A model generated the notes under the pieces. It was not told where the DNA came from. It made no database searches and saw only the letters and a program-made list of their open reading frames with translations. From positions 21,638,001 through 21,702,000 of the forward strand of contig OZ249445.1 in NCBI GenBank assembly GCA_965235115.1: DNA of 64,000 bases. The letters are read 5' to 3'. This document shows, piece after piece, positions 6,510 to 63,400 of the stretch (positions are counted from its first letter, which is position 1; each line of letters starts with the position of its first letter). Origin of the DNA: Laetmonice hystrix (lineage: Eukaryota). The translations under genes were made by a program, and so were the position numbers.

Positions 6510-7705
6510 TGGGTCATCAGTGGAACTGGTGTGTGGGCTTGACGGCTGCCCCCCTGGGAGTGCCTCGTGGCAGACATAGGTGTAGAGGAAGTGAGGTCCT
6601 CTCCCCTGGGGTTCCCGTCTGGTTTCTTATTCGTGGAACTTGGGTTTGGGTTTGACGGCCAGCCCCCCTGGGAGTACCTCGGGGCAGACATAGGTGTAGA
6701 TGAAATGAGGTCATCTCCCCTGGGGTTCCCGTCTGGTTTCTTATCCGTGGAACTTGGGTTTGGGTTTGACGGCCAGCCCCCCTGGGAGTACCTCGGGGCA
6801 GACATAGGTGTAGATGAAATGAGGTCATCTCCCCTGGGGTTCCCGTCAGGTTTCTTATCCATGGAACTGGGTTTTGGGTTTGACGGCCAGCCCCCCTGGG
6901 AGTACCTCGGTGCAGACATAGGTGTAGAGGAAGTGAGATCATCTCCCCTGGGGTTCCCGTCAGGTTTCTTATCCATGGAACTGAGTTTTGGGTTTGACGG
7001 CCAGCCCCCCTGGGAGTACCTCGGGGCAGACATAGGTGTAGAGGAAGTGAGGTCATCTCCCCTGGGGTTCCCGTCAGGTTTCTCTTCATCCCACTCATCC
7101 AGTTCTCGATGCATCCTTTGCAGTTCCAAATAACGTTCCCTTTGTTCCTGCTTGAATTGTATCTCCAGCTTAATTCTCTCTCGTTTCAACTTGCTCTCCC
7201 GTTCCATTAGCTCCCGCTTTAATTCGTAATCCCGGATCATCAGGTCTTCACGAACGCGCAGCTCATTCAGTTGTGCCTCGCTGTGCCGCACAGACTGTTC
7301 CAGGTCGGTCTCGGTATCCTCGGGTTCAGTCTCTTTTGCTGTATCAGCTACAACATCAAAAGGTGTGGTCAGCACACCTCCATCATCCCCTTGTCCATCT
7401 TTAGTGTCCTCAATCCAGAGGTTGAGGGATTCACGAAACTGATCAAACATGAACTTGGCTTCTTTGAGGTAATTGTTTGAACTCTCAATCTCCTTCGTTT
7501 CAGTCAGCACTCCATGGTACTCATTTTGTGCGTCCACAAATCGCCGGTATGCACTGTCAAACTCGTCTGCCAAGGCTGTGACCTGAGGGAGATTCTGTTT
7601 TGATTCCATAAGGTTATCGGCCCGAGTTGTTAAGCGGGTGACTGCAGCCTTTGCTATTCCTCTCCTTTTCCTTAACGGCTCTTGGACATTTTCTTTAGCT
7701 GCCAT
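6506..7705 (-). CDS. gag: ORF1, 399 aa Gag N-terminal region (helical/coiled-coil plus 38-aa repeats), unit 1
   Basis: Strong Kozak GCCATGG 39 nt after the LTR; RKRRGIAKAAVTRL helical start; E/K/R-rich coiled coil; stop overlaps the ORF2 ATG (ATGA). Confidence 0.85.
   Translation of the reverse strand: MAAKENVQEPLRKRRGIAKAAVTRLTTRADNLMESKQNLPQVTALADEFDSAYRRFVDAQNEYHGVLTETKEIESSNNYLKEAKFMFDQFRESLNLWIEDTKDGQGDDGGVLTTPFDVVADTAKETEPEDTETDLEQSVRHSEAQLNELRVREDLMIRDYELKRELMERESKLKRERIKLEIQFKQEQRERYLELQRMHRELDEWDEEKPDGNPRGDDLTSSTPMSAPRYSQGGWPSNPKLSSMDKKPDGNPRGDDLTSSTPMSAPRYSQGGWPSNPKPSSMDKKPDGNPRGDDLISSTPMSAPRYSQGGWPSNPNPSSTDKKPDGNPRGDDLISSTPMSAPRYSQGGWPSNPNPSSTNKKPDGNPRGEDLTSSTPMSATRHSQGGSRQAHTPVPLMTQ
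6515..7085 (-). repeat. Five tandem 114-bp (38-aa) repeats inside ORF1; equivalents at ~13885-14455, 21255-21825, 28615-29185, 35976-36546, 43346-43916, 50716-51286, 58076-58646
   Basis: ctcccctggggttcccgtc recurs at 6601, 6715, 6829, 6943, 7057; peptide KPDGNPRGDDL(T/I)SSTPMSAPRYSQGGWPSNPxxSSxDK. Confidence 0.95.
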
Positions 7706-7743
7706 GGCTGGTTTTGATCCTTGGGTAGTGAATTTGTACTTAA

Positions 7744-8300
7744 TGTAAGCAACGGGAATTCACATGGATTCACAACTAACTGGTCCTTGGCTTGACTACT
7801 TTTATTTTCCTAGCCTCAGCCTCAGAGTCTCCCCAGCAAACCGTCACTCGTACACAATGACTCGCTGACACGTACGGTACAAACTGTAAATAAAGCAAAA
7901 GATACTTGCTAGTCCAATATTTATAACCATTAGGCTAGACGTTCCCACTACATTAACCGAAACTCGAAACCAGAAGCCCCAAACACGTGGGGGCGATAAT
8001 AGGGTTATTATTGGAGACGGAGATATTTTAGAGGTTTGTGTCGAAGGAGAAGAAAAACCAGTACATATATATTAGACCCAAGAAGACATCAATACAAACT
8101 TAGTTCAAAGAAACTCACTTCACTGGGTTCCCATGGGTGAACATTATTCTAGAGGCTAAACCCAAACTGTCGAGGACCACGCTAGTGCCGTCACAATCTC
8201 CGTGTTTTTTCTCCCCTCTCCTCACCAGAGGGCACCCCATATCCCTCGCTCACCAGAGGGCTCCACCAACTGGCTTGCCGCCTAGCAGTCAAACCTAACA
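7744..8300 (-). repeat. LTR copy 1 (shared by units 1 and 2)
   Basis: Same sequence as 374..930. Confidence 0.8.
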
Positions 8301-8839
8301 TTTCCCGGCCCCCAATGCCACTATAAGGGGCATTCCTAACTAATAATAAACAAACTGCTGCCCCACACTAAACGACAAAAGATTCACCTGACAAATACAT
8401 ATGCCGGGTACCAAACCCATCAGGCAAAAAAAAACATCAAAAAGGTGGGACTGAACACTCGCAGAAACACTAGTTCTGCAATTCCACTGATATAGTCAAA
8501 TGTTCCAATGGTATATTCAAAAGGCTCCGCTGGTACAGTCAAAAGTTCCAATGGTATATTCAAAGGCTCCGCTGGTATAGTCAAATGTTCCAATGGTATA
8601 TTCAGCAACTCCAAGAGTACACCAGTCAGCTTACGGAAAAGTTTCCATAGGTTCAGTAACACAAAGAGGCAAAGTCAACCTTGGTGCAAACCAGGTACAA
8701 AGGTATACAAAAAATCTAACCACAATGGCCAGTGCTGACAATAAATTCTCCCAGTGGTTGACATGACATAGGTGTACAGGAACAAACAATACTCCTGATA
8801 ATACAGTACTAAACGTTCCTGTTTGAAAACAGGTGTTCC

Positions 8840-11800
8840 TTAAGGAACAGGTGCTGCCTCAAGCAAGCACAGCTTGGTAATCGGTCGGTCATAGAGAGAC
8901 CCATTAAATCTGATCTGTGCAGAACGAACTCGGTTGTCTCGTCCGGGGTAGATCTGAGTAACCAGACCAAGAGGCCACCGGTACCGCGGCATGGCCTCAT
9001 GTCGAACCAACACCAGGTCTCCAACGCGGACATCCCTTTCAATGGTTGTCCACTTTTGTCGCTCCTGCAACAAAGGCAAGTACTCTTTGGTCCAACGTGA
9101 CCAAAACACATCGGCCAGGTACTGGACCTGGCGCCAACGGCGTCGATACAGATCTTGTTTGGCAGTCAAACAAGGTGGCAAGGTGGGCCCAGACCGCAGC
9201 AGCAGCAAATGGTTTGGGGTCAGAGGCGTGTCATCGTTGGGGTCGTCAGACAACTTGGTTATAGGTCTCCCATTTACTATGCTTTCTGTAACACAGAATA
9301 GGGTGTTGAGGGAGTCATCGTCCAACCTTTGTTGTTGTAGGAGAGCTGTCAGAATGGCCCTCACGGTGCGGATTTGCCGCTCCCACACCCCTCCCATGTG
9401 GGAGGCCCCAGGAGGGTTGAACACCCACTGGACTTCCCTCTGCAGCAGAGCTTCACAGATCTTGCCTTGGTTCCACTCCTTAAGTGCCCTCCCCAACTCT
9501 GCCTTAGCCCCAACAAAGTTGGTGCCGTTGTCCGAGCGAATGACCTTGGGCTGACCCCGACGCGCCATAAACCGATGAAGGGCATTCAGATAGGCATCCG
9601 TGTCGAGAGAAGTAGCCACTTCCAAATGAACTGCGCGAGTTGTGAGGCAAGTAAACAGGCATCCATATCGCTTCACTTCGGTGCGCCCTCGTCTCACAAT
9701 GATTGGTCCAAAATAATCAACACCCACCATGCTGAAAGGAGGGTCTCCAGGTGTAACTCTGTCGGCAGGTAGGTCAGCCATCTGCTGCCTCATGGCACAT
9801 GCTCGTGCCCGTTTGCATGGGACACACTGTCCAATGACAGCTCGAACAACGGAACGTCCGCTTACAAGCCAATAACGAAGCCTTATCTCCGCTAGAACCC
9901 GCTCGACCCCAGCGTGTCCCAATTTGATGTGGTAATGGCCCACAATGAGCCGGGCCACGTGATGCTTGGCAGGCACAATCCAAGGATGCCTTCTGTCCTG
10001 TGGGAGGTCTGCTCTGGCAAGCCTGCCTCCTACACATAATACTCCCTCGGAAGAGAGAGTGGGTGCTAGTCTCTCATATCGGTTAGATCTCAGGGTGTCC
10101 TTACTGAGGGCTTGCCGCTGAATGTACCGCACTATCGCAGCTTCCGCAGCCCGCAGGTCAGCAGTAGTTAACCACCGGTGTTCATGAGCATCAGGTGCCT
10201 TGCACCGATTCCCAAGGTAGCCCACGAAACGCAACAACCAACCAACAGACTTGCACAAGCGGTACCATGAGGAATACTTGGCTAGCAGCTGGTCAATGAT
10301 AGACGCCTGGTGGTCCTCCGTGGCATACACCTGCGCATCCTTCTTCACTTCTGCTTCATCAGGTGGTAGGTTTCCCTTGACTGGAGAAACTGGCCAGGAG
10401 TCCTCAGTCCGGTAGAGGAACTCAGGCCCTATGAGCCAACGCTCAGAGTGGCATAGTTCAGTAGCGGTGAGACCACGGGAGCAATCATCAGCAGGGTTGT
10501 CTTCCGTCCTGACATGTCTCCATTGCGAGGGTTTGCTGATTTCCATGATTTGGGCCACGCGATTAGCCACAAAGGTCTGAAAACGCTTATCTTCATTGGC
10601 TAGGTACCACAGGACAATTGTGGAGTCTGTCCAAAAAACAGACCTCAACAGAGGGATTTCTAGGTCTTCCCTCAGCATACGGTCCAACTTGACCGCTTCC
10701 ACGGCTGCCGTCAGCTCAAGCCTAGGAACAGTTGTAGTTTTCATAGGCGCTAGCTTGGCCTTTGCAGCCAGAAGACCCATGTGAATGACCTGGTCAACAT
10801 CCACAACACGCAAATAACTGACAGCTCCATAAGCTCCAGTCGACGCGTCGGCAAAGTGGTGCAATTGGGCTGATATCATGGGACGACTGGGCTTCAGACA
10901 GCGAGGAACAGTGAAACTGGCAATGTTTGGCAAGTCTCCAAGCCACCGTGCCCATTGCAGAGACAGTCCGTCAGGCACACTTTCGTCCCAAGTGGTAGTC
11001 AAGCGGCAGGTTTCCTGGAAGATCAGTTTGGCCCGCAGGACGAACGGGCATACGAAACCCAAGGGATCGTATACCGAGCTAAGAGTGCTGAGAATTCCCC
11101 GTTTAGTAACAGGCTTCCTCGTTGGAGTGACGTCATAACCAAACACATCCTCCTCAAGCTTCCATAGCACTCCCAGTGCTCTCTCGGAGGGCAAGGATCC
11201 CCGGTCCAAGTCCAGGCTGGCAATACCTTTGGCGTGATCCTCCAGGGGGATAGTCTTGAGTAGTTCTCTTGAATTGCTGATCCATTTAGCGAGCCGAAAC
11301 CCGCCCGTTTTTAGCAAACCACGAAGTTGTTGTGACAATCTGATGGCAGCAGGCAGTCCATCAACTGCTTTAAGACAGTCATCAACATAAAAGTTTCGTT
11401 GGACCGTCTTGATGGCTACATCATCAAACCGGTCCCTATTGTCATCTGCACATTTTCTGAGTGCATAATTTGCCGCACTGGGTGACCACACGCCACCAAA
11501 CAAATGCGCTGTCATCCTGTATGTGGCAGGTTCCTGGTTCGGGTCGTCATTCTGCCACCAGAGGAAACGGAGCATATCACGGTCTTGGGGTGTGACTCTA
11601 ACCTGGTGGAACATGGATTCCACATCAGCCATGAATGCCACGGGCTCCTGCCTAAATCTTATCAAGACGCCGACTAACTTGTTGGTGAGATCAGGACCCT
11701 GATGCACTTTATCGTTTAGGGAGACTCCTCGGAACTTTGCCGCACAATCAAACACGACGCGGACTTTCTCCGGCTTCCGGGGGCAAGTTACTGCGTGATG

Positions 11801-13879
11801 GGGAATGTAGTTGACATAGCCATCAATTTCGTCATTTGAGCCGGGCGAGACTGGCTCTGCATACCCCTTCGCGACCAGTTCCCTTATCTGAGTGGTATAC
11901 AAAGCTCTGAGATCCTCGTCTCGAGTTAGGCGCCTGCCTAGCAACTTGAGTCTATGTTCGGCCATAGGTCGGTTGTCTGGCATGCATGGGGGTCTGTGTT
12001 TGAAGGGGATTCCAAAGGTGTAGTGACCATCACTCAAACAAGCAGTATTGTCCCACTCCTCAAGAACTCTCCGATCAGCTACTGATTGGGGCGTGACTGA
12101 GTTTCCCATATCCTCCAGTTCCCAGAAGCGGCCGACCTGTTGCTCTAGGGCTACAAAGCACGAGTAGACTGTATGGCTCCTGGCATCTCCAATTGGTCCA
12201 TTTATGGTCCATCCCAAGAGGGTTCTTGAAGCGTAGGGTTCGCCCGGTCCACCTGAACGGAGTTCCAAGGGCATGAGGGCCTGTGGTACGTCGTTACCGA
12301 TTATCAAATGCACTTCGTTTGAATTGGTGTTTGGAATCTCTATGCCATCAAAGTGTTTCCACTTCCCGAGTTCCTTATCCGACACCAAGCTGGTCAGCCC
12401 AACATAGATATTTGGACGGACGTAAACTGTCCTCAGATCGATAATCGATTGTTCCTCCAGATCAGATGCCTGGAGCCGTATCGACGTGGTCTGAAGCTTT
12501 TCCTTCCCGCTTAGGGTCATTAAATCCAGGGTTTCACACCTTCGGGCCGCCCCGAGCCTGTCAGCCAGGTGATTAGAACAGAAAGTGGCGGTACTCCCTG
12601 GATCCAGAAGTGCATAGGTATCCACATAGGCTGGCGACTGTAGGCCACGGACTCTAACAGGTACAATAGGCAAGGCAATCTTGCCTTCACGGGCCCCAGC
12701 AAAGCTACAACTGACTGTCTGGGATGTGCTAGCGGAGGTCTGAGCTCTTGAAACGGCTGGTGTCGCTGCAGGGAGGACAGTGGAATCACCTGTGGTTGAT
12801 TGATTTGCAGTCTGCACATCTGCAGTCCTATTGGCATTTTCCCACCTCAGGTGCAAGAAACGGCTGTGTTTAAGGTTGCACCCATCAATTCCGCAAACAA
12901 ATGACCGAGGACAATCTCTACCAAAATGACCTACATTGAAGCAGTTCATACAACGACCTGTTGATCGCACTAGACCAATACGATCCTTGATCCTCATGGC
13001 TTTGAAAGCAGGGCATGCAACAATGGAGTGTTGATCACCACAACACCAGCAGAGGACTCTGGAGCCTGGATCCTGGGCTTGAGGGGCCATAGTAGCACCA
13101 CCTGGCGCTTGGAGTGATGCTTGCACTGCAAAGCTTCCCTTGTTTCGCTGCTTCATGTCGACTTTCTTCTCAGAAGGCTTCCTCTCAGAGGTCAGATCAG
13201 CCAGTGCACCAAACACAGGATCGGAAACCTCGCTTGCTGCCAACTCAATGAACTTCACCACATCCTCCAAACTAGGCCTTCTGTGACGCTTTATCTCCTG
13301 GTTCTTGGATAACCAACGTGTTCTCAGGCGTTGCGGGAGCTTCTCGAGAATGGTCCTTAAATTTTGTGCACTTTCCAACTCGTGAAGATATCCCATCGTT
13401 TCCAGGGTTTCCTTGCAGCAGCGTAACACATCTGCATACTCTTGGAGGCCAACATTGCCTGTCAACTGCGAATGATTACAGATCCTTTCAATCCAAGCCT
13501 GCGAGATTATATTTTCATCCCCAAACCGCTCTTTCAAGAGTTTTCTGGCAAGGCGATATCCATCAGGAGGTGGGAGTACTTCACAACACTGGAGCAAGTT
13601 GCGAGCCTTGCCTGTGCAATATTGTAACAGAGCATTAAGTTTGACGCCATCACTAATAGTGTCTCTCTCCAAGGTGTGATCAAACCGCCTGATAAACGAC
13701 CAATACTGTAACGGATTTCCATCAAAGTAGGTCAATTCTGACTTTGGCAACTGCAGACTTTCCACCAAGGATTGGTGTTGCCGCTGTGTGGCGTCGAGCA
13801 TGCTGTACAAGACATGTGAGACATCAGGAGATCCCTGGGGCCCTATTGCAGATGGGTCCCATGAACGGTGTGACCTCAT
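8840..13879 (-). CDS. pol: ORF2 Gag-Pol, 1679 aa, unit 2, intact
   Basis: Same motifs as unit 1; carries the TCPRK variant (11785). Confidence 0.95.
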   Translation of the reverse strand: MRSHRSWDPSAIGPQGSPDVSHVLYSMLDATQRQHQSLVESLQLPKSELTYFDGNPLQYWSFIRRFDHTLERDTISDGVKLNALLQYCTGKARNLLQCCEVLPPPDGYRLARKLLKERFGDENIISQAWIERICNHSQLTGNVGLQEYADVLRCCKETLETMGYLHELESAQNLRTILEKLPQRLRTRWLSKNQEIKRHRRPSLEDVVKFIELAASEVSDPVFGALADLTSERKPSEKKVDMKQRNKGSFAVQASLQAPGGATMAPQAQDPGSRVLCWCCGDQHSIVACPAFKAMRIKDRIGLVRSTGRCMNCFNVGHFGRDCPRSFVCGIDGCNLKHSRFLHLRWENANRTADVQTANQSTTGDSTVLPAATPAVSRAQTSASTSQTVSCSFAGAREGKIALPIVPVRVRGLQSPAYVDTYALLDPGSTATFCSNHLADRLGAARRCETLDLMTLSGKEKLQTTSIRLQASDLEEQSIIDLRTVYVRPNIYVGLTSLVSDKELGKWKHFDGIEIPNTNSNEVHLIIGNDVPQALMPLELRSGGPGEPYASRTLLGWTINGPIGDARSHTVYSCFVALEQQVGRFWELEDMGNSVTPQSVADRRVLEEWDNTACLSDGHYTFGIPFKHRPPCMPDNRPMAEHRLKLLGRRLTRDEDLRALYTTQIRELVAKGYAEPVSPGSNDEIDGYVNYIPHHAVTCPRKPEKVRVVFDCAAKFRGVSLNDKVHQGPDLTNKLVGVLIRFRQEPVAFMADVESMFHQVRVTPQDRDMLRFLWWQNDDPNQEPATYRMTAHLFGGVWSPSAANYALRKCADDNRDRFDDVAIKTVQRNFYVDDCLKAVDGLPAAIRLSQQLRGLLKTGGFRLAKWISNSRELLKTIPLEDHAKGIASLDLDRGSLPSERALGVLWKLEEDVFGYDVTPTRKPVTKRGILSTLSSVYDPLGFVCPFVLRAKLIFQETCRLTTTWDESVPDGLSLQWARWLGDLPNIASFTVPRCLKPSRPMISAQLHHFADASTGAYGAVSYLRVVDVDQVIHMGLLAAKAKLAPMKTTTVPRLELTAAVEAVKLDRMLREDLEIPLLRSVFWTDSTIVLWYLANEDKRFQTFVANRVAQIMEISKPSQWRHVRTEDNPADDCSRGLTATELCHSERWLIGPEFLYRTEDSWPVSPVKGNLPPDEAEVKKDAQVYATEDHQASIIDQLLAKYSSWYRLCKSVGWLLRFVGYLGNRCKAPDAHEHRWLTTADLRAAEAAIVRYIQRQALSKDTLRSNRYERLAPTLSSEGVLCVGGRLARADLPQDRRHPWIVPAKHHVARLIVGHYHIKLGHAGVERVLAEIRLRYWLVSGRSVVRAVIGQCVPCKRARACAMRQQMADLPADRVTPGDPPFSMVGVDYFGPIIVRRGRTEVKRYGCLFTCLTTRAVHLEVATSLDTDAYLNALHRFMARRGQPKVIRSDNGTNFVGAKAELGRALKEWNQGKICEALLQREVQWVFNPPGASHMGGVWERQIRTVRAILTALLQQQRLDDDSLNTLFCVTESIVNGRPITKLSDDPNDDTPLTPNHLLLLRSGPTLPPCLTAKQDLYRRRWRQVQYLADVFWSRWTKEYLPLLQERQKWTTIERDVRVGDLVLVRHEAMPRYRWPLGLVTQIYPGRDNRVRSAQIRFNGSLYDRPITKLCLLEAAPVP

Positions 13880-15075
13880 TGGGTCATCAGTGGAACTGGT
13901 GTGTGGGCTTGACGGCTGCCCCCCTGGGAGTGCCTCGTGGCAGACATAGGTGTAGAGGAAGTGAGGTCCTCTCCCCTGGGGTTCCCGTCTGGTTTCTTAT
14001 TCGTGGAACTTGGGTTTGGGTTTGACGGCCAGCCCCCCTGGGAGTACCTCGGGGCAGACATAGGTGTAGATGAAATGAGGTCATCTCCCCTGGGGTTCCC
14101 GTCTGGTTTCTTATCCGTGGAACTTGGGTTTGGGTTTGACGGCCAGCCCCCCTGGGAGTACCTCGGGGCAGACATAGGTGTAGATGAAATGAGGTCATCT
14201 CCCCTGGGGTTCCCGTCAGGTTTCTTATCCATGGAACTGGGTTTTGGGTTTGACGGCCAGCCCCCCTGGGAGTACCTCGGTGCAGACATAGGTGTAGAGG
14301 AAGTGAGATCATCTCCCCTGGGGTTCCCGTCAGGTTTCTTATCCATGGAACTGAGTTTTGGGTTTGACGGCCAGCCCCCCTGGGAGTACCTCGGGGCAGA
14401 CATAGGTGTAGAGGAAGTGAGGTCATCTCCCCTGGGGTTCCCGTCAGGTTTCTCTTCATCCCACTCATCCAGTTCTCGATGCATCCTTTGCAGTTCCAAA
14501 TAACGTTCCCTTTGTTCCTGCTTGAATTGTATCTCCAGCTTAATTCTCTCTCGTTTCAACTTGCTCTCCCGTTCCATTAGCTCCCGCTTTAATTCGTAAT
14601 CCCGGATCATCAGGTCTTCACGAACGCGCAGCTCATTCAGTTGTGCCTCGCTGTGCCGCACAGACTGTTCCAGGTCGGTCTCGGTATCCTCGGGTTCAGT
14701 CTCTTTTGCTGTATCAGCTACAACATCAACAGGTGTGGTCAGCACACCTCCATCATCCCCTTGTCCATCTTTAGTGTCCTCAATCCAGAGGTTGAGGGAT
14801 TCACGAAACTGATCAAACATGAACTTGGCTTCTTTGAGGTAATTGTTTGAACTCTCAATCTCCTTCGTTTCAGTCAGCACTCCATGGTACTCATTTTGTG
14901 CGTCCACAAATCGCCGGTATGCACTGTCAAACTCGTCTGCCAAGGCTGTGACCTGAGGGAGATTCTGTTTTGATTCCATAAGGTTATCGGCCCGAGTTGT
15001 TAAGCGGGTGACTGCAGCCTTTGCTATTCCTCTCCTTTTCCTTAACGGCTCTTGGACATTTTCTTTAGCTGCCAT
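13876..15075 (-). CDS. gag: ORF1 Gag N-terminal region, unit 2
   Basis: 399-aa copy of the unit 1 ORF1. Confidence 0.85.
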   Translation of the reverse strand: MAAKENVQEPLRKRRGIAKAAVTRLTTRADNLMESKQNLPQVTALADEFDSAYRRFVDAQNEYHGVLTETKEIESSNNYLKEAKFMFDQFRESLNLWIEDTKDGQGDDGGVLTTPVDVVADTAKETEPEDTETDLEQSVRHSEAQLNELRVREDLMIRDYELKRELMERESKLKRERIKLEIQFKQEQRERYLELQRMHRELDEWDEEKPDGNPRGDDLTSSTPMSAPRYSQGGWPSNPKLSSMDKKPDGNPRGDDLTSSTPMSAPRYSQGGWPSNPKPSSMDKKPDGNPRGDDLISSTPMSAPRYSQGGWPSNPNPSSTDKKPDGNPRGDDLISSTPMSAPRYSQGGWPSNPNPSSTNKKPDGNPRGEDLTSSTPMSATRHSQGGSRQAHTPVPLMTQ

Positions 15076-15113
15076 GGCTGGTTTTGATCCTTGGGTAGTG
15101 AATTTGTACTTAA

Positions 15114-15670
15114 TGTAAGCAACGGGAATTCACATGGATTCACAACTAACTGGTCCTTGGCTTGACTACTTTTATTTTCCTAGCCTCAGCCTCAGAGTCT
15201 CCCCAGCAAACCGTCACTCGTACACAATGACTCGCTGACACGTACGGTACAAACTGTAAATAAAGCAAAAGATACTTGCTAGTCCAATATTTATAACCAT
15301 TAGGCTAGACGTTCCCACTACATTAACCGAAACTCGAAACCAGAAGCCCCAAACACGTGGGGGCGATAATAGGGTTATTATTGGAGACGGAGATATTTTA
15401 GAGGTTTGTGTCGAAGGAGAAGAAAAACCAGTACATATATATTAGACCCAAGAAGACATCAATACAAACTTAGTTCAAAGAAACTCACTTCACTGGGTTC
15501 CCATGGGTGAACATTATTCTAGAGGCTAAACCCAAACTGTCGAGGACCACGCTAGTGCCGTCACAATCTCCGTGTTTTTTCTCCCCTCTCCTCACCAGAG
15601 GGCACCCCATATCCCTCGCTCACCAGAGGGCTCCACCAACTGGCTTGCCGCCTAGCAGTCAAACCTAACA
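15114..15670 (-). repeat. LTR copy 2
   Basis: Same sequence as 374..930. Confidence 0.8.
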
Positions 15671-16209
15671 TTTCCCGGCCCCCAATGCCACTATAAGGGG
15701 CATTCCTAACTAATAATAAACAAACTGCTGCCCCACACTAAACGACAAAAGATTCACCTGACAAATACATATGCCGGGTACCAAACCCATCAGGCAAAAA
15801 AAAACATCAAAAAGGTGGGACTGAACACTCGCAGAAACACTAGTTCTGCAATTCCACTGATATAGTCAAATGTTCCAATGGTATATTCAAAAGGCTCCGC
15901 TGGTACAGTCAAAAGTTCCAATGGTATATTCAAAGGCTCCGCTGGTATAGTCAAATGTTCCAATGGTATATTCAGCAACTCCAAGAGTACACCAGTCAGC
16001 TTACGGAAAAGTTTCCATAGGTTCAGTAACACAAAGAGGCAAAGTCAACCTTGGTGCAAACCAGGTACAAAGGTATACAAAAAATCTAACCACAATGGCC
16101 AGTGCTGACAATAAATTCTCCCAGTGGTTGACATGACATAGGTGTACAGGAACAAACAATACTCCTGATAATACAGTACTAAACGTTCCTGTTTGAAAAC
16201 AGGTGTTCC

Positions 16210-51906: not shown

Positions 51907-51944
51907 GGCTGGTTTTGATCCTTGGGTAGTGAATTTGTACTTAA

Positions 51945-53040: not shown

Positions 53041-56000
53041 TTAAGGAACAGGTGCTGCCTCAAGCAAGCACAGCTTGGTAATCGGTCGGTCATAGAGAGA
53101 CCCATTAAATCTGATCTGTGCAGAACGAACTCGGTTGTCTCGTCCGGGGTAGATCTGAGTAACCAGACCAAGAGGCCACCGGTACCGCGGCATGGCCTCA
53201 TGTCGAACCAACACCAGGTCTCCAACGCGGACATCCCTTTCAATGGTTGTCCACTTTTGTCGCTCCTGCAACAAAGGCAAGTACTCTTTGGTCCAACGTG
53301 ACCAAAACACATCGGCCAGGTACTGGACCTGGCGCCAACGGCGTCGATACAGATCTTGTTTGGCAGTCAAACAAGGTGGCAAGGTGGGCCCAGACCGCAG
53401 CAGCAGCAAATGGTTTGGGGTCAGAGGCGTGTCATCGTTGGGGTCGTCAGACAACTTGGTTATAGGTCTCCCATTTACTATGCTTTCTGTAACACAGAAT
53501 AGGGTGTTGAGGGAGTCATCGTCCAACCTTTGTTGTTGTAGGAGAGCTGTCAGAATGGCCCTCACGGTGCGGATTTGCCGCTCCCACACCCCTCCCATGT
53601 GGGAGGCCCCAGGAGGGTTGAACACCCACTGGACTTCCCTCTGCAGCAGAGCTTCACAGATCTTGCCTTGGTTCCACTCCTTAAGTGCCCTCCCCAACTC
53701 TGCCTTAGCCCCAACAAAGTTGGTGCCGTTGTCCGAGCGAATGACCTTGGGCTGACCCCGACGCGCCATAAACCGATGAAGGGCATTCAGATAGGCATCC
53801 GTGTCGAGAGAAGTAGCCACTTCCAAATGAACTGCGCGAGTTGTGAGGCAAGTAAACAGGCATCCATATCGCTTCACTTCGGTGCGCCCTCGTCTCACAA
53901 TGATTGGTCCAAAATAATCAACACCCACCATGCTGAAAGGAGGGTCTCCAGGTGTAACTCTGTCGGCAGGTAGGTCAGCCATCTGCTGCCTCATGGCACA
54001 TGCTCGTGCCCGTTTGCATGGGACACACTGTCCAATGACAGCTCGAACAACGGAACGTCCGCTTACAAGCCAATAACGAAGCCTTATCTCCGCTAGAACC
54101 CGCTCGACCCCAGCGTGTCCCAATTTGATGTGGTAATGGCCCACAATGAGCCGGGCCACGTGATGCTTGGCAGGCACAATCCAAGGATGCCTTCTGTCCT
54201 GTGGGAGGTCTGCTCTGGCAAGCCTGCCTCCTACACATAATACTCCCTCGGAAGAGAGAGTGGGTGCTAGTCTCTCATATCGGTTAGATCTCAGGGTGTC
54301 CTTACTGAGGGCTTGCCGCTGAATGTACCGCACTATCGCAGCTTCCGCAGCCCGCAGGTCAGCAGTAGTTAACCACCGGTGTTCATGAGCATCAGGTGCC
54401 TTGCACCGATTCCCAAGGTAGCCCACGAAACGCAACAACCAACCAACAGACTTGCACAAGCGGTACCATGAGGAATACTTGGCTAGCAGCTGGTCAATGA
54501 TAGACGCCTGGTGGTCCTCCGTGGCATACACCTGCGCATCCTTCTTCACTTCTGCTTCATCAGGTGGTAGGTTTCCCTTGACTGGAGAAACTGGCCAGGA
54601 GTCCTCAGTCCGGTAGAGGAACTCAGGCCCTATGAGCCAACGCTCAGAGTGGCATAGTTCAGTAGCGGTGAGACCACGGGAGCAATCATCAGCAGGGTTG
54701 TCTTCCGTCCTGACATGTCTCCATTGCGAGGGTTTGCTGATTTCCATGATTTGGGCCACGCGATTAGCCACAAAGGTCTGAAAACGCTTATCTTCATTGG
54801 CTAGGTACCACAGGACAATTGTGGAGTCTGTCCAAAAAACAGACCTCAACAGAGGGATTTCTAGGTCTTCCCTCAGCATACGGTCCAACTTGACCGCTTC
54901 CACGGCTGCCGTCAGCTCAAGCCTAGGAACAGTTGTAGTTTTCATAGGCGCTAGCTTGGCCTTTGCAGCCAGAAGACCCATGTGAATGACCTGGTCAACA
55001 TCCACAACACGCAAATAACTGACAGCTCCATAAGCTCCAGTCGACGCGTCGGCAAAGTGGTGCAATTGGGCTGATATCATGGGACGACTGGGCTTCAGAC
55101 AGCGAGGAACAGTGAAACTGGCAATGTTTGGCAAGTCTCCAAGCCACCGTGCCCATTGCAGAGACAGTCCGTCAGGCACACTTTCGTCCCAAGTGGTAGT
55201 CAAGCGGCAGGTTTCCTGGAAGATCAGCTTGGCCCGCAGGACGAACGGGCATACGAAACCCAAGGGATCGTATACCGAGCTAAGAGTGCTGAGAATTCCC
55301 CGTTTAGTAACAGGCTTCCTCGTTGGAGTGACGTCATAACCAAACACATCCTCCTCAAGCTTCTCAGTGCTCTCTCGGAGGGCAAGGATCCCCGGTCCAA
55401 GTCCAGGCTGGCAATACCTTTGGCGTGATCCTCCAGGGGGATAGTCTTGAGTAGTTCTCTTGAATTGCTGATCCATTTAGCGAGCCGAAACCCGCCCGTT
55501 TTTAGCAAACCACGAAGTTGTTGTGACAATCTGATGGCAGCAGGCAGTCCATCAACTGCTTTAAGACAGTCATCAACATAAAAGTTTCGTTGGACCGTCT
55601 TGATGGCTACATCATCAAACCGGTCCCTATTGTCATCTGCACATTTTCTGAGTGCATAATTTGCCGCACTGGGTGACCACACGCCACCAAACAAATGCGC
55701 TGTCATCCTGTATGTGGCAGGTTCCTGGTTCGGGTCGTCATTCTGCCACCAGAGGAAACGGAGCATATCACGGTCTTGGGGTGTGACTCTAACCTGGTGG
55801 AACATGGATTCCACATCAGCCATGAATGCCACGGGCTCCTGCCTAAATCTTATCAAGACGCCGACTAACTTGTTGGTGAGATCAGGACCCTGATGCACTT
55901 TATCGTTTAGGGAGACTCCTCGGAACTTTGCCGCACAATCAAACACGACGCGGACTTTCTCCGGCTTCCGGGGGCGAGTTACTGCGTGATGGGGAATGTA

Positions 56001-58070
56001 GTTGACATAGCCATCAATTTCGTCATTTGAGCCGGGCGAGACTGGCTCTGCATACCCCTTCGCGACCAGTTCCCTTATCTGAGTGGTATACAAAGCTCTG
56101 AGATCCTCGTCTCGAGTTAGGCGCCTGCCTAGCAACTTGAGTCTATGTTCGGCCATAGGTCGGTTGTCTGGCATGCATGGGGGTCTGTGTTTGAAGGGGA
56201 TTCCAAAGGTGTAGTGACCATCACTCAAACAAGCAGTATTGTCCCACTCCTCAAGAACTCTCCGATCAGCTACTGATTGGGGCGTGACTGAGTTTCCCAT
56301 ATCCTCCAGTTCCCAGAAGCGGCCGACCTGTTGCTCTAGGGCTACAAAGCACGAGTAGACTGTATGGCTCCTGGCATCTCCAATTGGTCCATTTATGGTC
56401 CATCCCAAGAGGGTTCTTGAAGCGTAGGGTTCGCCCGGTCCACCTGAACGGAGTTCCAAGGGCATGAGGGCCTGTGGTACGTCGTTACCGATTATCAAAT
56501 GCACTTCGTTTGAATTGGTGTTTGGAATCTCTATGCCATCAAAGTGTTTCCACTTCCCGAGTTCCTTATCCGACACCAAGCTGGTCAGCCCAACATAGAT
56601 ATTTGGACGGACGTAAACTGTCCTCAGATCGATAATCGATTGTTCCTCCAGATCAGATGCCTGGAGCCGTATCGACGTGGTCTGAAGCTTTTCCTTCCCG
56701 CTTAGGGTCATTAAATCCAGGGTTTCACACCTTCGGGCCGCCCCGAGCCTGTCAGCCAGGTGATTAGAACAGAAAGTGGCGGTACTCCCTGGATCCAGAA
56801 GTGCATAGGTATCCACATAGGCTGGCGACTGTAGGCCACGGACTCTAACAGGTACAATAGGCAAGGCAATCTTGCCTTCACGGGCCCCAGCAAAGCTACA
56901 ACTGACTGTCTGGGATGTGCTAGCGGAGGTCTGAGCTCTTGAAACGGCTGGTGTCGCTGCAGGGAGGACAGTGGAATCACCTGTGGTTGATTGATTTGCA
57001 GTCTGCACATCTGCAGTCCTATTGGCATTTTCCCACCTCAGGTGCAAGAAACGGCTGTGTTTAAGGTTGCACCCATCAATTCCGCAAACAAATGACCGAG
57101 GACAATCTCTACCAAAATGACCTACATTGAAGCAGTTCATACAACGACCTGTTGATCGCACTAGACCAATACGATCCTTGATCCTCATGGCTTTGAAAGC
57201 AGGGCATGCAACAATGGAGTGTTGATCACCACAACACCAGCAGAGGACTCTGGAGCCTGGATCCTGGGCTTGAGGGGCCATAGTAGCACCACCTGGCGCT
57301 TGGAGTGATGCTTGCACTGCAAAGCTTCCCTTGTTTCGCTGCTTCATGTCGACTTTCTTCTCAGAAGGCTTCCTCTCAGAGGTCAGATCAGCCAGTGCAC
57401 CAAACACAGGATCGGAAACCTCGCTTGCTGCCAACTCAATGAACTTCACCACATCCTCCAAACTAGGCCTTCTGTGACGCTTTATCTCCTGGTTCTTGGA
57501 TAACCAACGTGTTCTCAGGCGTTGCGGGAGCTTCTCGAGAATGGTCCTTAAATTTTGTGCACTTTCCAACTCGTGAAGATATCCCATCGTTTCCAGGGTT
57601 TCCTTGCAGCAGCGTAACACATCTGCATACTCTTGGAGGCCAACATTGCCTGTCAACTGCGAATGATTACAGATCCTTTCAATCCAAGCCTGCGAGATTA
57701 TATTTTCATCCCCAAACCGCTCTTTCAAGAGTTTTCTGGCAAGGCGATATCCATCAGGAGGTGGGAGTACTTCACAACACTGGAGCAAGTTGCGAGCCTT
57801 GCCTGTGCAATATTGTAACAGAGCATTAAGTTTGACGCCATCACTAATAGTGTCTCTCTCCAAGGTGTGATCAAACCGCCTGATAAACGACCAATACTGT
57901 AACGGATTTCCATCAAAGTAGGTCAATTCTGACTTTGGCAACTGCAGACTTTCCACCAAGGATTGGTGTTGCCGCTGTGTGGCGTCGAGCATGCTGTACA
58001 AGACATGTGAGACATCAGGAGATCCCTGGGGCCCTATTGCAGATGGGTCCCATGAACGGTGTGACCTCAT
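53041..58070 (-). pseudogene. pol: ORF2 of unit 8, frameshifted by the -10 bp indel (fragments 55224..58070 and 53041..55476)
   Basis: Same junction aagcttctcagtgct as units 4 and 5. Confidence 0.93.
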
Positions 58071-59266
58071 TGGGTCATCAGTGGAACTGGTGTGTGGGCT
58101 TGACGGCTGCCCCCCTGGGAGTGCCTCGTGGCAGACATAGGTGTAGAGGAAGTGAGGTCCTCTCCCCTGGGGTTCCCGTCTGGTTTCTTATTCGTGGAAC
58201 TTGGGTTTGGGTTTGACGGCCAGCCCCCCTGGGAGTACCTCGGGGCAGACATAGGTGTAGATGAAATGAGGTCATCTCCCCTGGGGTTCCCGTCTGGTTT
58301 CTTATCCGTGGAACTTGGGTTTGGGTTTGACGGCCAGCCCCCCTGGGAGTACCTCGGGGCAGACATAGGTGTAGATGAAATGAGGTCATCTCCCCTGGGG
58401 TTCCCGTCAGGTTTCTTATCCATGGAACTGGGTTTTGGGTTTGACGGCCAGCCCCCCTGGGAGTACCTCGGTGCAGACATAGGTGTAGAGGAAGTGAGAT
58501 CATCTCCCCTGGGGTTCCCGTCAGGTTTCTTATCCATGGAACTGAGTTTTGGGTTTGACGGCCAGCCCCCCTGGGAGTACCTCGGGGCAGACATAGGTGT
58601 AGAGGAAGTGAGGTCATCTCCCCTGGGGTTCCCGTCAGGTTTCTCTTCATCCCACTCATCCAGTTCTCGATGCATCCTTTGCAGTTCCAAATAACGTTCC
58701 CTTTGTTCCTGCTTGAATTGTATCTCCAGCTTAATTCTCTCTCGTTTCAACTTGCTCTCCCGTTCCATTAGCTCCCGCTTTAATTCGTAATCCCGGATCA
58801 TCAGGTCTTCACGAACGCGCAGCTCATTCAGTTGTGCCTCGCTGTGCCGCACAGACTGTTCCAGGTCGGTCTCGGTATCCTCGGGTTCAGTCTCTTTTGC
58901 TGTATCAGCTACAACATCAACAGGTGTGGTCAGCACACCTCCATCATCCCCTTGTCCATCTTTAGTGTCCTCAATCCAGAGGTTGAGGGATTCACGAAAC
59001 TGATCAAACATGAACTTGGCTTCTTTGAGGTAATTGTTTGAACTCTCAATCTCCTTCGTTTCAGTCAGCACTCCATGGTACTCATTTTGTGCGTCCACAA
59101 ATCGCCGGTATGCACTGTCAAACTCGTCTGCCAAGGCTGTGACCTGAGGGAGATTCTGTTTTGATTCCATAAGGTTATCGGCCCGAGTTGTTAAGCGGGT
59201 GACTGCAGCCTTTGCTATTCCTCTCCTTTTCCTTAACGGCTCTTGGACATTTTCTTTAGCTGCCAT
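58067..59266 (-). CDS. gag: ORF1 Gag N-terminal region, unit 8
   Basis: 399-aa copy. Confidence 0.85.
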   Translation of the reverse strand: MAAKENVQEPLRKRRGIAKAAVTRLTTRADNLMESKQNLPQVTALADEFDSAYRRFVDAQNEYHGVLTETKEIESSNNYLKEAKFMFDQFRESLNLWIEDTKDGQGDDGGVLTTPVDVVADTAKETEPEDTETDLEQSVRHSEAQLNELRVREDLMIRDYELKRELMERESKLKRERIKLEIQFKQEQRERYLELQRMHRELDEWDEEKPDGNPRGDDLTSSTPMSAPRYSQGGWPSNPKLSSMDKKPDGNPRGDDLTSSTPMSAPRYSQGGWPSNPKPSSMDKKPDGNPRGDDLISSTPMSAPRYSQGGWPSNPNPSSTDKKPDGNPRGDDLISSTPMSAPRYSQGGWPSNPNPSSTNKKPDGNPRGEDLTSSTPMSATRHSQGGSRQAHTPVPLMTQ

Positions 59267-59304
59267 GGCTGGTTTTGATCCTTGGGTAGTGAATTTGTAC
59301 TTAA

Positions 59305-59861
59305 TGTAAGCAACGGGAATTCACATGGATTCACAACTAACTGGTCCTTGGCTTGACTACTTTTATTTTCCTAGCCTCAGCCTCAGAGTCTCCCCAGCAA
59401 ACCGTCACTCGTACACAATGACTCGCTGACACGTACGGTACAAACTGTAAATAAAGCAAAAGATACTTGCTAGTCCAATATTTATAACCATTAGGCTAGA
59501 CGTTCCCACTACATTAACCGAAACTCGAAACCAGAAGCCCCAAACACGTGGGGGCGATAATAGGGTTATTATTGGAGACGGAGATATTTTAGAGGTTTGT
59601 GTCGAAGGAGAAGAAAAACCAGTACATATATATTAGACCCAAGAAGACATCAATACAAACTTAGTTCAAAGAAACTCACTTCACTGGGTTCCCATGGGTG
59701 AACATTATTCTAGAGGCTAAACCCAAACTGTCGAGGACCACGCTAGTGCCGTCACAATCTCCGTGTTTTTTCTCCCCTCTCCTCACCAGAGGGCACCCCA
59801 TATCCCTCGCTCACCAGAGGGCTCCACCAACTGGCTTGCCGCCTAGCAGTCAAACCTAACA
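59305..59861 (-). repeat. LTR copy 8
   Basis: Same sequence as 374..930. Confidence 0.8.
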
Positions 59862-60400
59862 TTTCCCGGCCCCCAATGCCACTATAAGGGGCATTCCTAA
59901 CTAATAATAAACAAACTGCTGCCCCACACTAAACGACAAAAGATTCACCTGACAAATACATATGCCGGGTACCAAACCCATCAGGCAAAAAAAAACATCA
60001 AAAAGGTGGGACTGAACACTCGCAGAAACACTAGTTCTGCAATTCCACTGATATAGTCAAATGTTCCAATGGTATATTCAAAAGGCTCCGCTGGTACAGT
60101 CAAAAGTTCCAATGGTATATTCAAAGGCTCCGCTGGTATAGTCAAATGTTCCAATGGTATATTCAGCAACTCCAAGAGTACACCAGTCAGCTTACGGAAA
60201 AGTTTCCATAGGTTCAGTAACACAAAGAGGCAAAGTCAACCTTGGTGCAAACCAGGTACAAAGGTATACAAAAAATCTAACCACAATGGCCAGTGCTGAC
60301 AATAAATTCTCCCAGTGGTTGACATGACATAGGTGTACAGGAACAAACAATACTCCTGATAATACAGTACTAAACGTTCCTGTTTGAAAACAGGTGTTCC

Positions 60401-63400
60401 TTAAGGAACAGGTGCTGCCTCAAGCAAGCACAGCTTGGTAATCGGTCGGTCATAGAGAGACCCATTAAATCTGATCTGTGCAGAACGAACTCGGTTGTCT
60501 CGTCCGGGGTAGATCTGAGTAACCAGACCAAGAGGCCACCGGTACCGCGGCATGGCCTCATGTCGAACCAACACCAGGTCTCCAACGCGGACATCCCTTT
60601 CAATGGTTGTCCACTTTTGTCGCTCCTGCAACAAAGGCAAGTACTCTTTGGTCCAACGTGACCAAAACACATCGGCCAGGTACTGGACCTGGCGCCAACG
60701 GCGTCGATACAGATCTTGTTTGGCAGTCAAACAAGGTGGCAAGGTGGGCCCAGACCGCAGCAGCAGCAAATGGTTTGGGGTCAGAGGCGTGTCATCGTTG
60801 GGGTCGTCAGACAACTTGGTTATAGGTCTCCCATTTACTATGCTTTCTGTAACACAGAATAGGGTGTTGAGGGAGTCATCGTCCAACCTTTGTTGTTGTA
60901 GGAGAGCTGTCAGAATGGCCCTCACGGTGCGGATTTGCCGCTCCCACACCCCTCCCATGTGGGAGGCCCCAGGAGGGTTGAACACCCACTGGACTTCCCT
61001 CTGCAGCAGAGCTTCACAGATCTTGCCTTGGTTCCACTCCTTAAGTGCCCTCCCCAACTCTGCCTTAGCCCCAACAAAGTTGGTGCCGTTGTCCGAGCGA
61101 ATGACCTTGGGCTGACCCCGACGCGCCATAAACCGATGAAGGGCATTCAGATAGGCATCCGTGTCGAGAGAAGTAGCCACTTCCAAATGAACTGCGCGAG
61201 TTGTGAGGCAAGTAAACAGGCATCCATATCGCTTCACTTCGGTGCGCCCTCGTCTCACAATGATTGGTCCAAAATAATCAACACCCACCATGCTGAAAGG
61301 AGGGTCTCCAGGTGTAACTCTGTCGGCAGGTAGGTCAGCCATCTGCTGCCTCATGGCACATGCTCGTGCCCGTTTGCATGGGACACACTGTCCAATGACA
61401 GCTCGAACAACGGAACGTCCGCTTACAAGCCAATAACGAAGCCTTATCTCCGCTAGAACCCGCTCGACCCCAGCGTGTCCCAATTTGATGTGGTAATGGC
61501 CCACAATGAGCCGGGCCACGTGATGCTTGGCAGGCACAATCCAAGGATGCCTTCTGTCCTGTGGGAGGTCTGCTCTGGCAAGCCTGCCTCCTACACATAA
61601 TACTCCCTCGGAAGAGAGAGTGGGTGCTAGTCTCTCATATCGGTTAGATCTCAGGGTGTCCTTACTGAGGGCTTGCCGCTGAATGTACCGCACTATCGCA
61701 GCTTCCGCAGCCCGCAGGTCAGCAGTAGTTAACCACCGGTGTTCATGAGCATCAGGTGCCTTGCACCGATTCCCAAGGTAGCCCACGAAACGCAACAACC
61801 AACCAACAGACTTGCACAAGCGGTACCATGAGGAATACTTGGCTAGCAGCTGGTCAATGATAGACGCCTGGTGGTCCTCCGTGGCATACACCTGCGCATC
61901 CTTCTTCACTTCTGCTTCATCAGGTGGTAGGTTTCCCTTGACTGGAGAAACTGGCCAGGAGTCCTCAGTCCGGTAGAGGAACTCAGGCCCTATGAGCCAA
62001 CGCTCAGAGTGGCATAGTTCCCATAGCGGTGAGACCACGGGAGCAATCATCAGCAGGGTTGTCTTCCGTCCTGACATGTCTCCATTGCGAGGGTTTGCTG
62101 ATTTCCATGATTTGGGCCACGCGATTAGCCACAAAGGTCTGAAAACGCTTATCTTCATTGGCTAGGTACCACAGGACAATTGTGGAGTCTGTCCAAAAAA
62201 CAGACCTCAACAGAGGGATTTCTAGGTCTTCCCTCAGCATACGGTCCAACTTGACCGCTTCCACGGCTGCCGTCAGCTCAAGCCTAGGAACAGTTGTAGT
62301 TTTCATAGGCGCTAGCTTGGCCTTTGCAGCCAGAAGACCCATGTGAATGACCTGGTCAACATCCACAACACGCAAATAACTGACAGCTCCATAAGCTCCA
62401 GTCGACGCGTCGGCAAAGTGGTGCAATTGGGCTGATATCGTGGGACGACTGGGCTTCAGACAGCGAGGAACAGTGAAACTGGCAATGTTTGGCAAGTCTC
62501 CAAGCCACCGTGCCCATTGCAGAGACAGTCCGTCAGGCACACTTTCGTCCCAAGTGGTAGTCAAGCGGCAGGTTTCCTGGAAGATCAGCTTGGCCCGCAG
62601 GACGAACGGGCATACGAAACCCAAGGGATCGTATACCGAGCTAAGAGTGCTGAGAATTCCCCGTTTAGTAACAGGCTTCCTCATTGGAGTGACGTCATAA
62701 CCAAACACATCCTCCTCAAGCTTCCATAGCACTCCCAGTGCTCTCTCGGAGGGCAAGGATCCCCGGTCCAAGTCCAGGCTGGCAATACCTTTGGCGTGAT
62801 CCTCCAGGGGGATAGTCTTGAGTAGTTCTCTTGAATTGCTGATCCATTTAGCGAGCCGAAACCCGCCCGTTTTTAGCAAACCACGAAGTTGTTGTGACAA
62901 TCTGATGGCAGCAGGCAGTCCATCAACTGCTTTAAGACAGTCATCAACATAAAAGTTTCGTTGGACCGTCTTGATGGCTACATCATCAAACCGGTCCCTA
63001 TTGTCATCTGCACATTTTCTGAGCGCATAATTTGCCGCACTGGGTGACCACACGCCACCAAACAAATGCGCTGTCATCCTGTATGTGGCAGGTTCCTGGT
63101 TCGGGTCGTCATTCTGCCACCAGAGGAAACGGAGCATATCACGGTCTTGGGGTGTGACTCTAACCTGGTGGAACATGGATTCCACATCAGCCATGAATGC
63201 CACGGGCTCCTGCCTAAATCTTATCAAGACGCCGACTAACTTGTTGGTGAGATCAGGACCCTGATGCACTTTATCGTTTAGGGAGACTCCTCGGAACTTT
63301 GCCGCACAATCAAACACGACGCGGACTTTCTCCGGCTTCCGGGGGTGAGTTACTGCGTGATGGGGAATGTAGTTGACATAGCCATCAATTTCGTCATTTG

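What the first reader, a model, noticed from the sequence alone, without database searches (positions are those of the whole stretch)
7360..62023. Nascent 4-unit higher-order repeat (29,461 bp)
Seen: five rare variants recur at exactly +29,461 bp. These are 7360/36821 (V>F; units 1 and 5), 11027/40488 (synonymous; 2 and 6), 11785/41246 (R>C; 2 and 6), the -10 bp indel ~25903/~55364 (4 and 8), and the +1 indel 32560/62021 (5 and 9). Discordant sites between the two blocks are 19203, 22151, 24425, 31785, 35577 and 38807. Known: multi-monomer higher-order repeats are the hallmark of satellite evolution by unequal exchange (e.g. alpha satellite). Inference: a block of four units was duplicated in one event, so the retrotransposon is now evolving as satellite DNA with ~7.4-kb monomers.
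Basis: partly seen in the sequence, partly recalled or inferred. Interest (0 to 1): 0.72.

Follow-up and report, generated by a model that had tools for sequence, protein, structure and literature searches.

The report
Two-copy 4-unit duplication in retrotransposon array
A tandem array of near-identical 7.4-kb BEL/Pao retrotransposon copies probably contains one imperfect duplication of a four-copy block, which is the expected outcome of unequal exchange and not yet a true higher-order repeat.

Summary
The window holds 8.7 head-to-tail units (7,370 bp) of a BEL/Pao LTR retrotransposon. One LTR-sized spacer separates each pair of units, and they differ by only 15 variant events.

It also missed 6 discordant sites in a row to the left and 5 in a row to the right of the chosen interval.

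The enrichment at offset 4 is moderate. P is 0.002-0.01 for that offset and 0.03-0.12 if any offset is allowed.

The best fit is one unequal exchange giving P Q R S [T|P] Q R S T, with the junction in unit 5. This explains 10 of the 15 variants, including the private variants clustered at both ends. It still needs about 8 later events, and unit 5 is a four-part mosaic.

The phase does not continue on either side, so this is a single two-copy duplication. The pattern is ordinary for arrays evolving by unequal exchange.

The parts
1..64000 (-). Tandem array of 8.7 units of a BEL/Pao LTR retrotransposon. The period is 7,370 bp, with 7,360 in U4 and U8 and 7,361 in U5. Genes lie on the minus strand.
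   Evidence: Word offsets and anchors. Unit alignment with only 15 variant events. Pfam hits on the 1679-aa ORF2: Peptidase_A17, DUF1759, DUF5641, Integrase_H2C2, rve, RVT_1.
3518..32978 (.). Block A of the best-fit duplication: right part of U1, then U2, U3, U4 and the left part of U5. Both ends can shift left by up to 416 bp.
   Evidence: This is the phase that minimises discordant sites at +29,461, with 8 discordant (my count from the event list; same total in the phase fit). It is bounded by the +1 variant at 62020-62023 and the first U9-only site at 62440.
32979..62439 (.). Block B of the best-fit duplication: right part of U5, then U6, U7, U8 and the left part of U9. Both ends can shift left by up to 416 bp.
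   Evidence: Shifted unit V2 (U2 right + U3 left) is identical to V6. V4 differs from V8 by 1 event, V1 from V5 by 4, and V3 from V7 by 3.
32563..32978 (.). Inferred exchange junction inside U5. To its left U5 shares the +1 complex variant with U9. Further right it shares 36821 C>A with U1.
   Evidence: Variant matrix. The junction itself carries no sequence mark because the units are identical there.
7360..7360 (-). C>A (V116F in ORF1), shared with 36821. Carriers U1 and U5. Non-CpG transversion.
11027..11785 (-). Two linked variants: 11027 (K951 synonymous) and 11785 (R699C, a CpG transition). They are shared with 40488 and 41246. Carriers U2 and U6.
25901..25903 (-). Site of the 10-bp deletion plus adjacent C>T, which shifts the ORF2 frame. 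The identical lesion is at 33262-33264 (U5) and 55362-55364 (U8).
32559..32562 (-). Complex +1 change (CAG to CCCA on the + strand), which shifts the ORF2 frame. The identical lesion is at 62020-62023 (U9).
62440..63346 (-). Four variants found only in U9 within the window: 62440, 62683, 63024 and 63346. They mark where the +29,461 match ends.
   Evidence: The alleles at 63024 and 63346 also occur in contigs of the sample's sequencing runs.
7744..8831 (-). Approximate single LTR shared between successive elements. It lies in the 1,134-bp non-coding stretch between the ORF2 stop (8840) and the next ORF1 start (7705), and holds a 21/42-bp tandem repeat.
   Evidence: The boundaries are inferred from TG..CA ends and could not be checked against a solo LTR or a flank.

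Best explanation
The window lies inside a tandem array of a BEL/Pao LTR retrotransposon whose units share single LTRs. The array is maintained by DNA-level unequal exchange, not by transposition.

Within it, one out-of-register exchange between units four apart (offset 29,461 bp) turned ...P Q R S T... into ...P Q R S [T-left|P-right] Q R S T.... In window terms U1 = P, U2/U6 = Q, U3/U7 = R, U4/U8 = S, U5 is the hybrid junction unit and U9 = T.

Afterwards a few point mutations, about half of them CpG transitions, and short conversion patches blurred the match. The conversions mainly moved sequence from U4 into its neighbour U5.

Shown: the variant pattern, the period, the coding state of the units and the CpG bias. 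Inferred: the single exchange, its junction and the later conversions.
For: - Five of the 7 shared variant groups sit 4 units apart, and other offsets score 0-2.
- The markers include a transversion and two complex indels that are very unlikely to arise twice.
- The model predicts a hybrid unit. U5 shares its left marker with U9 and its right-end marker with U1.
- The model predicts that unduplicated flanks keep unmatched variants. The U1-only site 2044 and all four U9-only sites 62440-63346 lie there.
- V2 and V6 are identical over 7.37 kb including two derived sites. V4 and V8 differ once.
- The longest exact self-matches in the window, 9,858 bp and 7,370 bp, are at this offset.
- Identical frameshifts occur in U4/U5/U8 and in U5/U9, and the 13 single-base variants split 10 amino-acid-changing to 3 synonymous. 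This shows copying in place without selection on the genes.
- Unequal LTR-LTR exchange giving shared-LTR tandems, and the organisation of array variants into multi-unit repeats by unequal exchange, are both established ideas (PMC5932611, read).
Against: - The statistics are moderate once the offset is not fixed in advance, with P 0.03-0.12.
- Even in the best phase, 8 sites disagree between the blocks against 5 that agree.
- V1/V5 (4 differences) and V3/V7 (3 differences) are no closer than random pairs, whose mean is 4.17.
- U5 is a four-part mosaic: 2315A like U4, +1 like U9, the deletion like U4 and U8, and 36821A like U1. A clean exchange predicts only two parts.
- Clean concordance covers only 25.2-26.9 kb, less than one full period.
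- The unit order rests on the assembly alone. There is a 14.1-kb stretch without any marker (41246-55364), so reads shorter than that could not fix the copy number in block B.
Confidence: 0.5

Rival explanations
1. Assembly artefact. The two blocks are the two haplotypes (or two read groups) of one 4-unit stretch, joined falsely in tandem inside a 99.95%-identical repeat. The mosaic unit U5 is the false join, with a mixed consensus.
For: - The signature is the same as a real exchange between homologues.
- U5 sits at the join. It is a four-part mosaic and carries a private variant.
- The blocks differ at only 8 sites in 29.5 kb, which could be allelic.
- Block B has a 14.1-kb marker-free stretch.
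- Contigs of the same sample show alleles absent from all nine window units. Other copies or another haplotype of this sequence therefore exist.
Against: - The window has no gaps.
- An assembler collapsing ambiguous overlaps would tend to drop the unmarked unit U7 rather than keep it (my inference).
- The flanks (left part of U1, right part of U9) differ from U5. This fits a real array continuing on both sides.
- Nothing in the data points directly to an error.
Confidence: 0.22
2. There was no 4-unit event. The interleaved sharing comes from several independent short gene conversions, recurrent CpG mutations and exchanges of other sizes. The excess at offset 4 is a small-number accident.
For: - Only 7 shared groups exist, and P is 0.03-0.12 when any offset may win.
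- Non-fitting sharing is present: U4+U5, U1+U3, and the deletion in U5.
- Four-gamete conflicts show that conversion or exchange happened inside units.
- Six of the 13 single-base variants are at CpG bases, which make up 7.6% of the unit (P = 2e-4). One CpG was hit twice, at alignment columns 4415 and 4416.
Against: - Four separate unit pairs (1/5, 2/6, 4/8, 5/9) would each need their own conversion at the same distance.
- The markers are mostly not CpG sites, and two are complex indels.
- The clustering of private variants in the two flanks would be unexplained.
Confidence: 0.18
3. A true, continuing higher-order repeat. The 29.5-kb block is the repeating module of a much longer array, and the window shows two of many copies.
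For: Same period-4 sharing. Contigs of the sample show further variants of this element that are not in the window, so more copies exist somewhere.
Against: - The +29,461 match fails at all 6 informative sites left of 7360 and at all 5 right of 32560 (partners 62440-63346).
- The right part of U9 is unlike the right part of U5. A third block in phase does not start inside the window.
Confidence: 0.1

Closest known systems
[quoted passage not shown]
   Same: The layout is internal region, one LTR, internal region, repeated head to tail. Expansion is at the DNA level and broken copies are copied along.
   Different: Here the array has at least 8.7 full-length 7.4-kb units at about 99.95% identity, from a BEL/Pao element in a probable annelid. 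Most described cases are dimers or short arrays. The array ends and LTR boundaries were not seen.
Alpha-satellite higher-order repeats
   Same: A multi-unit block recurs at a fixed period. The mechanism is the same in principle, namely out-of-register exchange.
   Different: - Only two copies are present and they do not continue.
- Units within a block differ by about 0.06% and block partners by about 0.03%. That is a twofold contrast, whereas in alpha satellite the monomers within a block differ far more than the block copies do (from my own knowledge, not checked here).
- The monomer is 7.4 kb and codes for protein, not 171 bp.
TE-derived satellite arrays in Drosophila (R1 and Bari1 arrays; McGurk and Barbash 2018, PMC5932611)
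   Same: Whole transposable elements are arrayed in tandem. Theory (Stephan 1989, cited there) predicts that unequal exchange organises variants into multi-unit repeats, and this is suspected for the R1 array.
   Different: Those arrays arose by double insertion of elements without LTRs, and their internal order could not be assembled. Here the order is read from an assembly but is unverified.
Human macrosatellites and largest tandem repeats (Warburton et al. 2008, PMC2588610)
   Same: Kilobase-scale units in tandem.
   Different: I saw only the title and abstract in the search list, so no detailed comparison is claimed.

Membership tests
Higher-order repeat satellite (alpha-satellite type) | A block of several monomers recurs head to tail at a constant period. 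| tested here: met
   Five variant groups recur at exactly +29,461 bp, which is 4 units. Only two copies are present.
Higher-order repeat satellite (alpha-satellite type) | The block phase continues over three or more copies through the array. | tested here: not met
   All 6 informative sites left of 7360 and all 5 right of 32560 (partners 62440-63346) disagree at +29,461. Neighbouring windows could not be reached.
Higher-order repeat satellite (alpha-satellite type) | Block copies are clearly more alike than the monomers within a block. | tested here: inconclusive
   Partners differ by 4, 0, 3 and 1 events (mean 2.0) against a mean of 4.17 for other pairs, P = 0.02. Two of the four partner pairs are not closer than average.
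Tandem duplication by one unequal exchange | A hybrid junction unit, and unmatched variants confined to the unduplicated flanks. | tested here: inconclusive
   U5 shares +1 with U9 on its left and 36821A with U1 on its right. Site 2044 and sites 62440-63346 lie in the flanks. However, U5 also carries U4-like patches (2315A and the 10-bp deletion), so it is a four-part mosaic.
Tandem duplication by one unequal exchange | The unit order is supported by single molecules spanning both copies. | not testable with these tools
   Only short contigs of the same sample were available.
Shared-LTR tandem retrotransposon array | Exactly one LTR-sized non-coding block lies between successive internal regions. 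| tested here: met
   There are 1,134 bp between the ORF2 stop and the next ORF1 start in every unit, at a constant period. The LTR ends are inferred only.
Shared-LTR tandem retrotransposon array | No target-site duplication or flanking DNA lies between units. | tested here: inconclusive
   The units are contiguous and identical at their junctions. Without a solo LTR or an array end, the exact LTR termini cannot be fixed.
BEL/Pao LTR retrotransposon | A polyprotein with a Pao-type domain set. | tested here: met
   Peptidase_A17 (6.6e-45), DUF5641 (1.6e-31), DUF1759 and Integrase_H2C2 pass their curated cut-offs. rve and RVT_1 match below cut-off.

The most novel reading that the evidence does not exclude
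The 29.5-kb block is the first visible module of a genuine higher-order repeat in a very long array, possibly heterochromatic or centromeric. The array would be built from a full-length protein-coding BEL/Pao retrotransposon, caught at the moment a multi-unit period emerges.
Probability: 0.08. Interest if true: 0.55.

Novelty: new member of a known kind. Interest (0 to 1): 0.27.

Why it matters
If the unit order is real, this is a clean, datable snapshot of how a tandem array of whole retrotransposons starts to gain multi-unit structure by unequal exchange. Theory predicts this step, but it is seldom seen at single-variant resolution in kilobase-unit arrays.

The case also carries a practical warning. 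In arrays this uniform, with 15 variants in 64 kb and a 14-kb marker-free stretch, apparent periodic structure depends wholly on assembly phasing. It should not be interpreted without spanning reads.

Tried and rejected
- Whole-genome search of the window's own assembly: no genome is held for this window.
- Earlier notes of the scan: nothing on neighbouring windows. The search by sequence was blank.
- Laying sequencing runs: all four runs are short de Bruijn contigs from one sample, probably the one that was assembled.
  - They cannot phase units, and their depth is not a copy number.
  - They did not show the 10-bp deletion or the +1 change. Contigs drop rare variants, so this is no evidence of absence.
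- Single-unit duplications only: rejected. Descendants would then sit side by side, yet 6 of the 7 shared groups are not contiguous.
- An earlier 2-unit duplication to explain 4464T in U1+U3: rejected, because U5 and U7 lack that allele.
- Moving the junction right of the deletion, to make the U5 deletion fit: rejected, because it raises the discordant sites from 8 to 10-11 (my count from the event list).
- Protein-atlas search for ORF1: the best score was 0.86, below the level the tool treats as meaningful.
Full report
**What is there**

The 64-kb window has no gaps and is one tandem array. Identical 20-mers recur at 7,370, 7,360 or 7,361 bp, and anchors from any part of the unit recur nine times. 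I cut it into nine units:

| Unit | Window coordinates | Length |
|---|---|---|
| U1 | 1-7370 | 7,370 |
| U2 | 7371-14740 | 7,370 |
| U3 | 14741-22110 | 7,370 |
| U4 | 22111-29470 | 7,360 |
| U5 | 29471-36831 | 7,361 |
| U6 | 36832-44201 | 7,370 |
| U7 | 44202-51571 | 7,370 |
| U8 | 51572-58931 | 7,360 |
| U9 | 58932-64000 | partial |

Each unit carries two ORFs on the minus strand.
- ORF1 is 399 aa. It has no Pfam match and no credible atlas relative. It contains the 5 x 114-bp repeat.
- ORF2 is 1679 aa, with DUF1759, RVT_1, Peptidase_A17 (Pao), Integrase_H2C2, rve and DUF5641. This domain set marks a BEL/Pao LTR retrotransposon.

Between the ORF2 stop and the next ORF1 start lie 1,134 non-coding bases, enough for one LTR. 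The layout is therefore internal region, one LTR, internal region, and so on. This is the structure produced by unequal LTR-LTR recombination (PMC5932611). Earlier notes of this scan place the genome in a spiralian, probably an annelid. I did not test that.

**The variant matrix**

Only 15 variant events separate the nine units. Positions are alignment columns.

| Column | Carriers |
|---|---|
| 41 | U4 |
| 1976 | U6 |
| 2044 | U1 |
| 2315 | U4+U5 |
| 3089-3092 (complex +1) | U5+U9 |
| 3509 | U9 |
| 3658 | U2+U6 |
| 3752 | U9 |
| 3792-3804 (10-bp deletion plus C>T) | U4+U5+U8 |
| 4093 | U9 |
| 4415 | U9 |
| 4416 | U2+U6 |
| 4464 | U1+U3 |
| 6117 | U5 |
| 7361 | U1+U5 |

ORF2 is uninterrupted in U1, U2, U3, U6 and U7. 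It is split by the deletion in U4 and U8, by the deletion and the +1 in U5, and by the +1 in U9.

**Is it more than chance?**

Five of the 7 shared variant groups contain a pair 4 units apart. The other offsets score 2, 1, 1, 0, 0 and 0.
- Random placement of carriers, or random unit order, gives P = 0.002-0.01 for offset 4 taken alone.
- P rises to 0.03-0.12 when any offset is allowed to win.

The markers are of good quality. Column 7361 is a non-CpG transversion, column 3658 is a non-CpG transition, and the two indels are complex events. Independent recurrence is therefore unlikely.

The longest exact self-matches in the window, 9,858 bp and 7,370 bp, are at this offset. They are not much longer than the 6,746 bp seen at offsets 1 and 5, because there are so few variants.

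**Extent of the match**

At +29,461 the concordant derived sites lie only between 7360 and 32560 (partners 36821-62021).
- Left of that interval, six informative sites in a row disagree: 2044, 2315, 3089, 3792, 4463 and 6116.
- Right of it, five in a row disagree: 32979-33875 against 62440-63346.
- Inside it, five disagree: 9346/38807, 19203, 22151, 24425 and 31785.

The phase therefore does not run on into a third copy on either side within the window.

**Best model**

One out-of-register exchange between units four apart predicts P Q R S [T-left|P-right] Q R S T. The fit is best with the junction in U5 between 32563 and 32978. That gives block A at about 3518-32978 and block B at about 32979-62439, and both can shift left by up to 416 bp.

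The model explains 10 of the 15 variants as older than the event:
- The five duplicated ones.
- The U1-only site 2044, in the unduplicated left flank.
- The four U9-only sites, in the unduplicated right flank.

In this phase the partner pairs differ by 4, 0, 3 and 1 events, a mean of 2.0. Other pairs have a mean of 4.17, and the permutation P is 0.02.

**What does not fit**

Eight sites still disagree. There are three private changes (22151, 35577, 38807). The rest are 2315A in the neighbours U4 and U5, 4464T in U1 and U3, and the deletion in U5.

U5 is a four-part mosaic: 2315A like U4, the +1 like U9, the deletion like U4 and U8, and 36821A like U1. A clean exchange predicts a two-part hybrid. 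Short conversion patches from the neighbouring U4 would explain this. A mixed consensus at a false assembly join would explain it equally well.

Column 2315 is a CpG transition and may simply have happened twice. Six of the 13 single-base variants are CpG transitions, although CpG bases make up 7.6% of the unit (P = 2e-4). One CpG was hit on both strands, at column 4415 in U9 and column 4416 in U2/U6.

By simple event counting on the matrix (my own reckoning), the duplication saves only about three events compared with independent conversions.

**Evolving as satellite DNA**

This part of the reading holds in a limited sense. Identical frameshifts are present in several units, so broken copies were multiplied in place. 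The 13 single-base variants split 10 amino-acid-changing to 3 synonymous, which shows no sign of selection on the genes.

**Reads**

Four runs of one sample and one study hold the sequence, all as short de Bruijn contigs. I laid them on U7, which carries none of the variant alleles, at 45501-50700.
- They show the U9 alleles of columns 4093 and 4415, so those are not polishing errors.
- Contigs break at column 2315.
- They show several alleles absent from all nine window units: about 48425, a cluster at 48667-48749, 48797, 49520 and 49943.

More copies, or another haplotype, of this element therefore exist outside the window. These contigs cannot phase units, their depth is not a copy number, and they drop rare variants. 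They do not test the unit order.

The longest stretch without any marker is 14,118 bp, from 41246 to 55364. Only reads longer than that can fix how many unmarked units lie in block B.

**Limits**

No whole genome is held for this window. The scan's notes hold nothing on neighbouring windows.

**Verdict**

A single, imperfect, two-copy duplication of a four-unit block by unequal exchange is the best explanation, at about 0.5. Misassembly has about 0.2, and accidental patterning by conversion about 0.2. A true continuing higher-order repeat has about 0.1. The phenomenon is what theory and earlier work on TE-derived arrays predict, so it is a new instance of a known kind and of modest interest.

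Noticed in passing
window 43337-44536 (minus strand), and the same place in every unit: A 399-aa ORF lies upstream of the gag-pol ORF and overlaps its start by 4 bases. It contains five 38-aa repeats (the 114-bp tandem repeat). It has no Pfam match, and the best atlas score is 0.86, below a meaningful level. BEL/Pao elements usually have one gag-pol ORF, and DUF1759 (gag-like) already sits in ORF2 here, so this extra ORF is unexplained.
   Followed up: partly
alignment columns 2315, 3509, 3752, 4093, 4415, 4416 (for example window 24425, 62440, 62683, 63024, 63346, 11785): Six of the 13 single-base variants are CpG transitions, although CpG bases make up 7.6% of the unit (P = 2e-4). The unit's observed/expected CpG ratio is 0.59. 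One CpG was hit on both strands in different units. This suggests the array is methylated in the germ line. At columns 3509 and 4093, U9 keeps the CpG and the other eight units have lost it, so U9 may hold the older state there.
   Followed up: partly
window 32559-32562 and 62020-62023, compared with the deleted bases (alignment columns 3792-3801, for example window 11162-11171 in U2): The complex +1 change creates TTCCCATAGCG, which resembles TTCCATAGCAC. The latter is the very stretch removed by the 10-bp deletion about 700 bp away. This may be a templated mutation between two similar motifs, or it may be chance.
   Followed up: no
window 45501-50700 as laid, run X4: A fourth, small run of the same sample holds 95-99% similar contigs that skip 384-834 bp of ORF2 (for example 45714-46491 and 47144-47979). 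These are internally deleted relatives or a related family elsewhere in the genome. The run type is not on record.
   Followed up: no
window 1112-1234, and the same place in every unit: A 21/42-bp tandem repeat (about 2.9 copies of 42 bp) lies inside the presumed LTR.
   Followed up: no
window 41247-55361: A 14.1-kb stretch has no distinguishing variant at all, and unit U7 carries none. The copy number here depends entirely on reads longer than 14 kb.
   Followed up: partly
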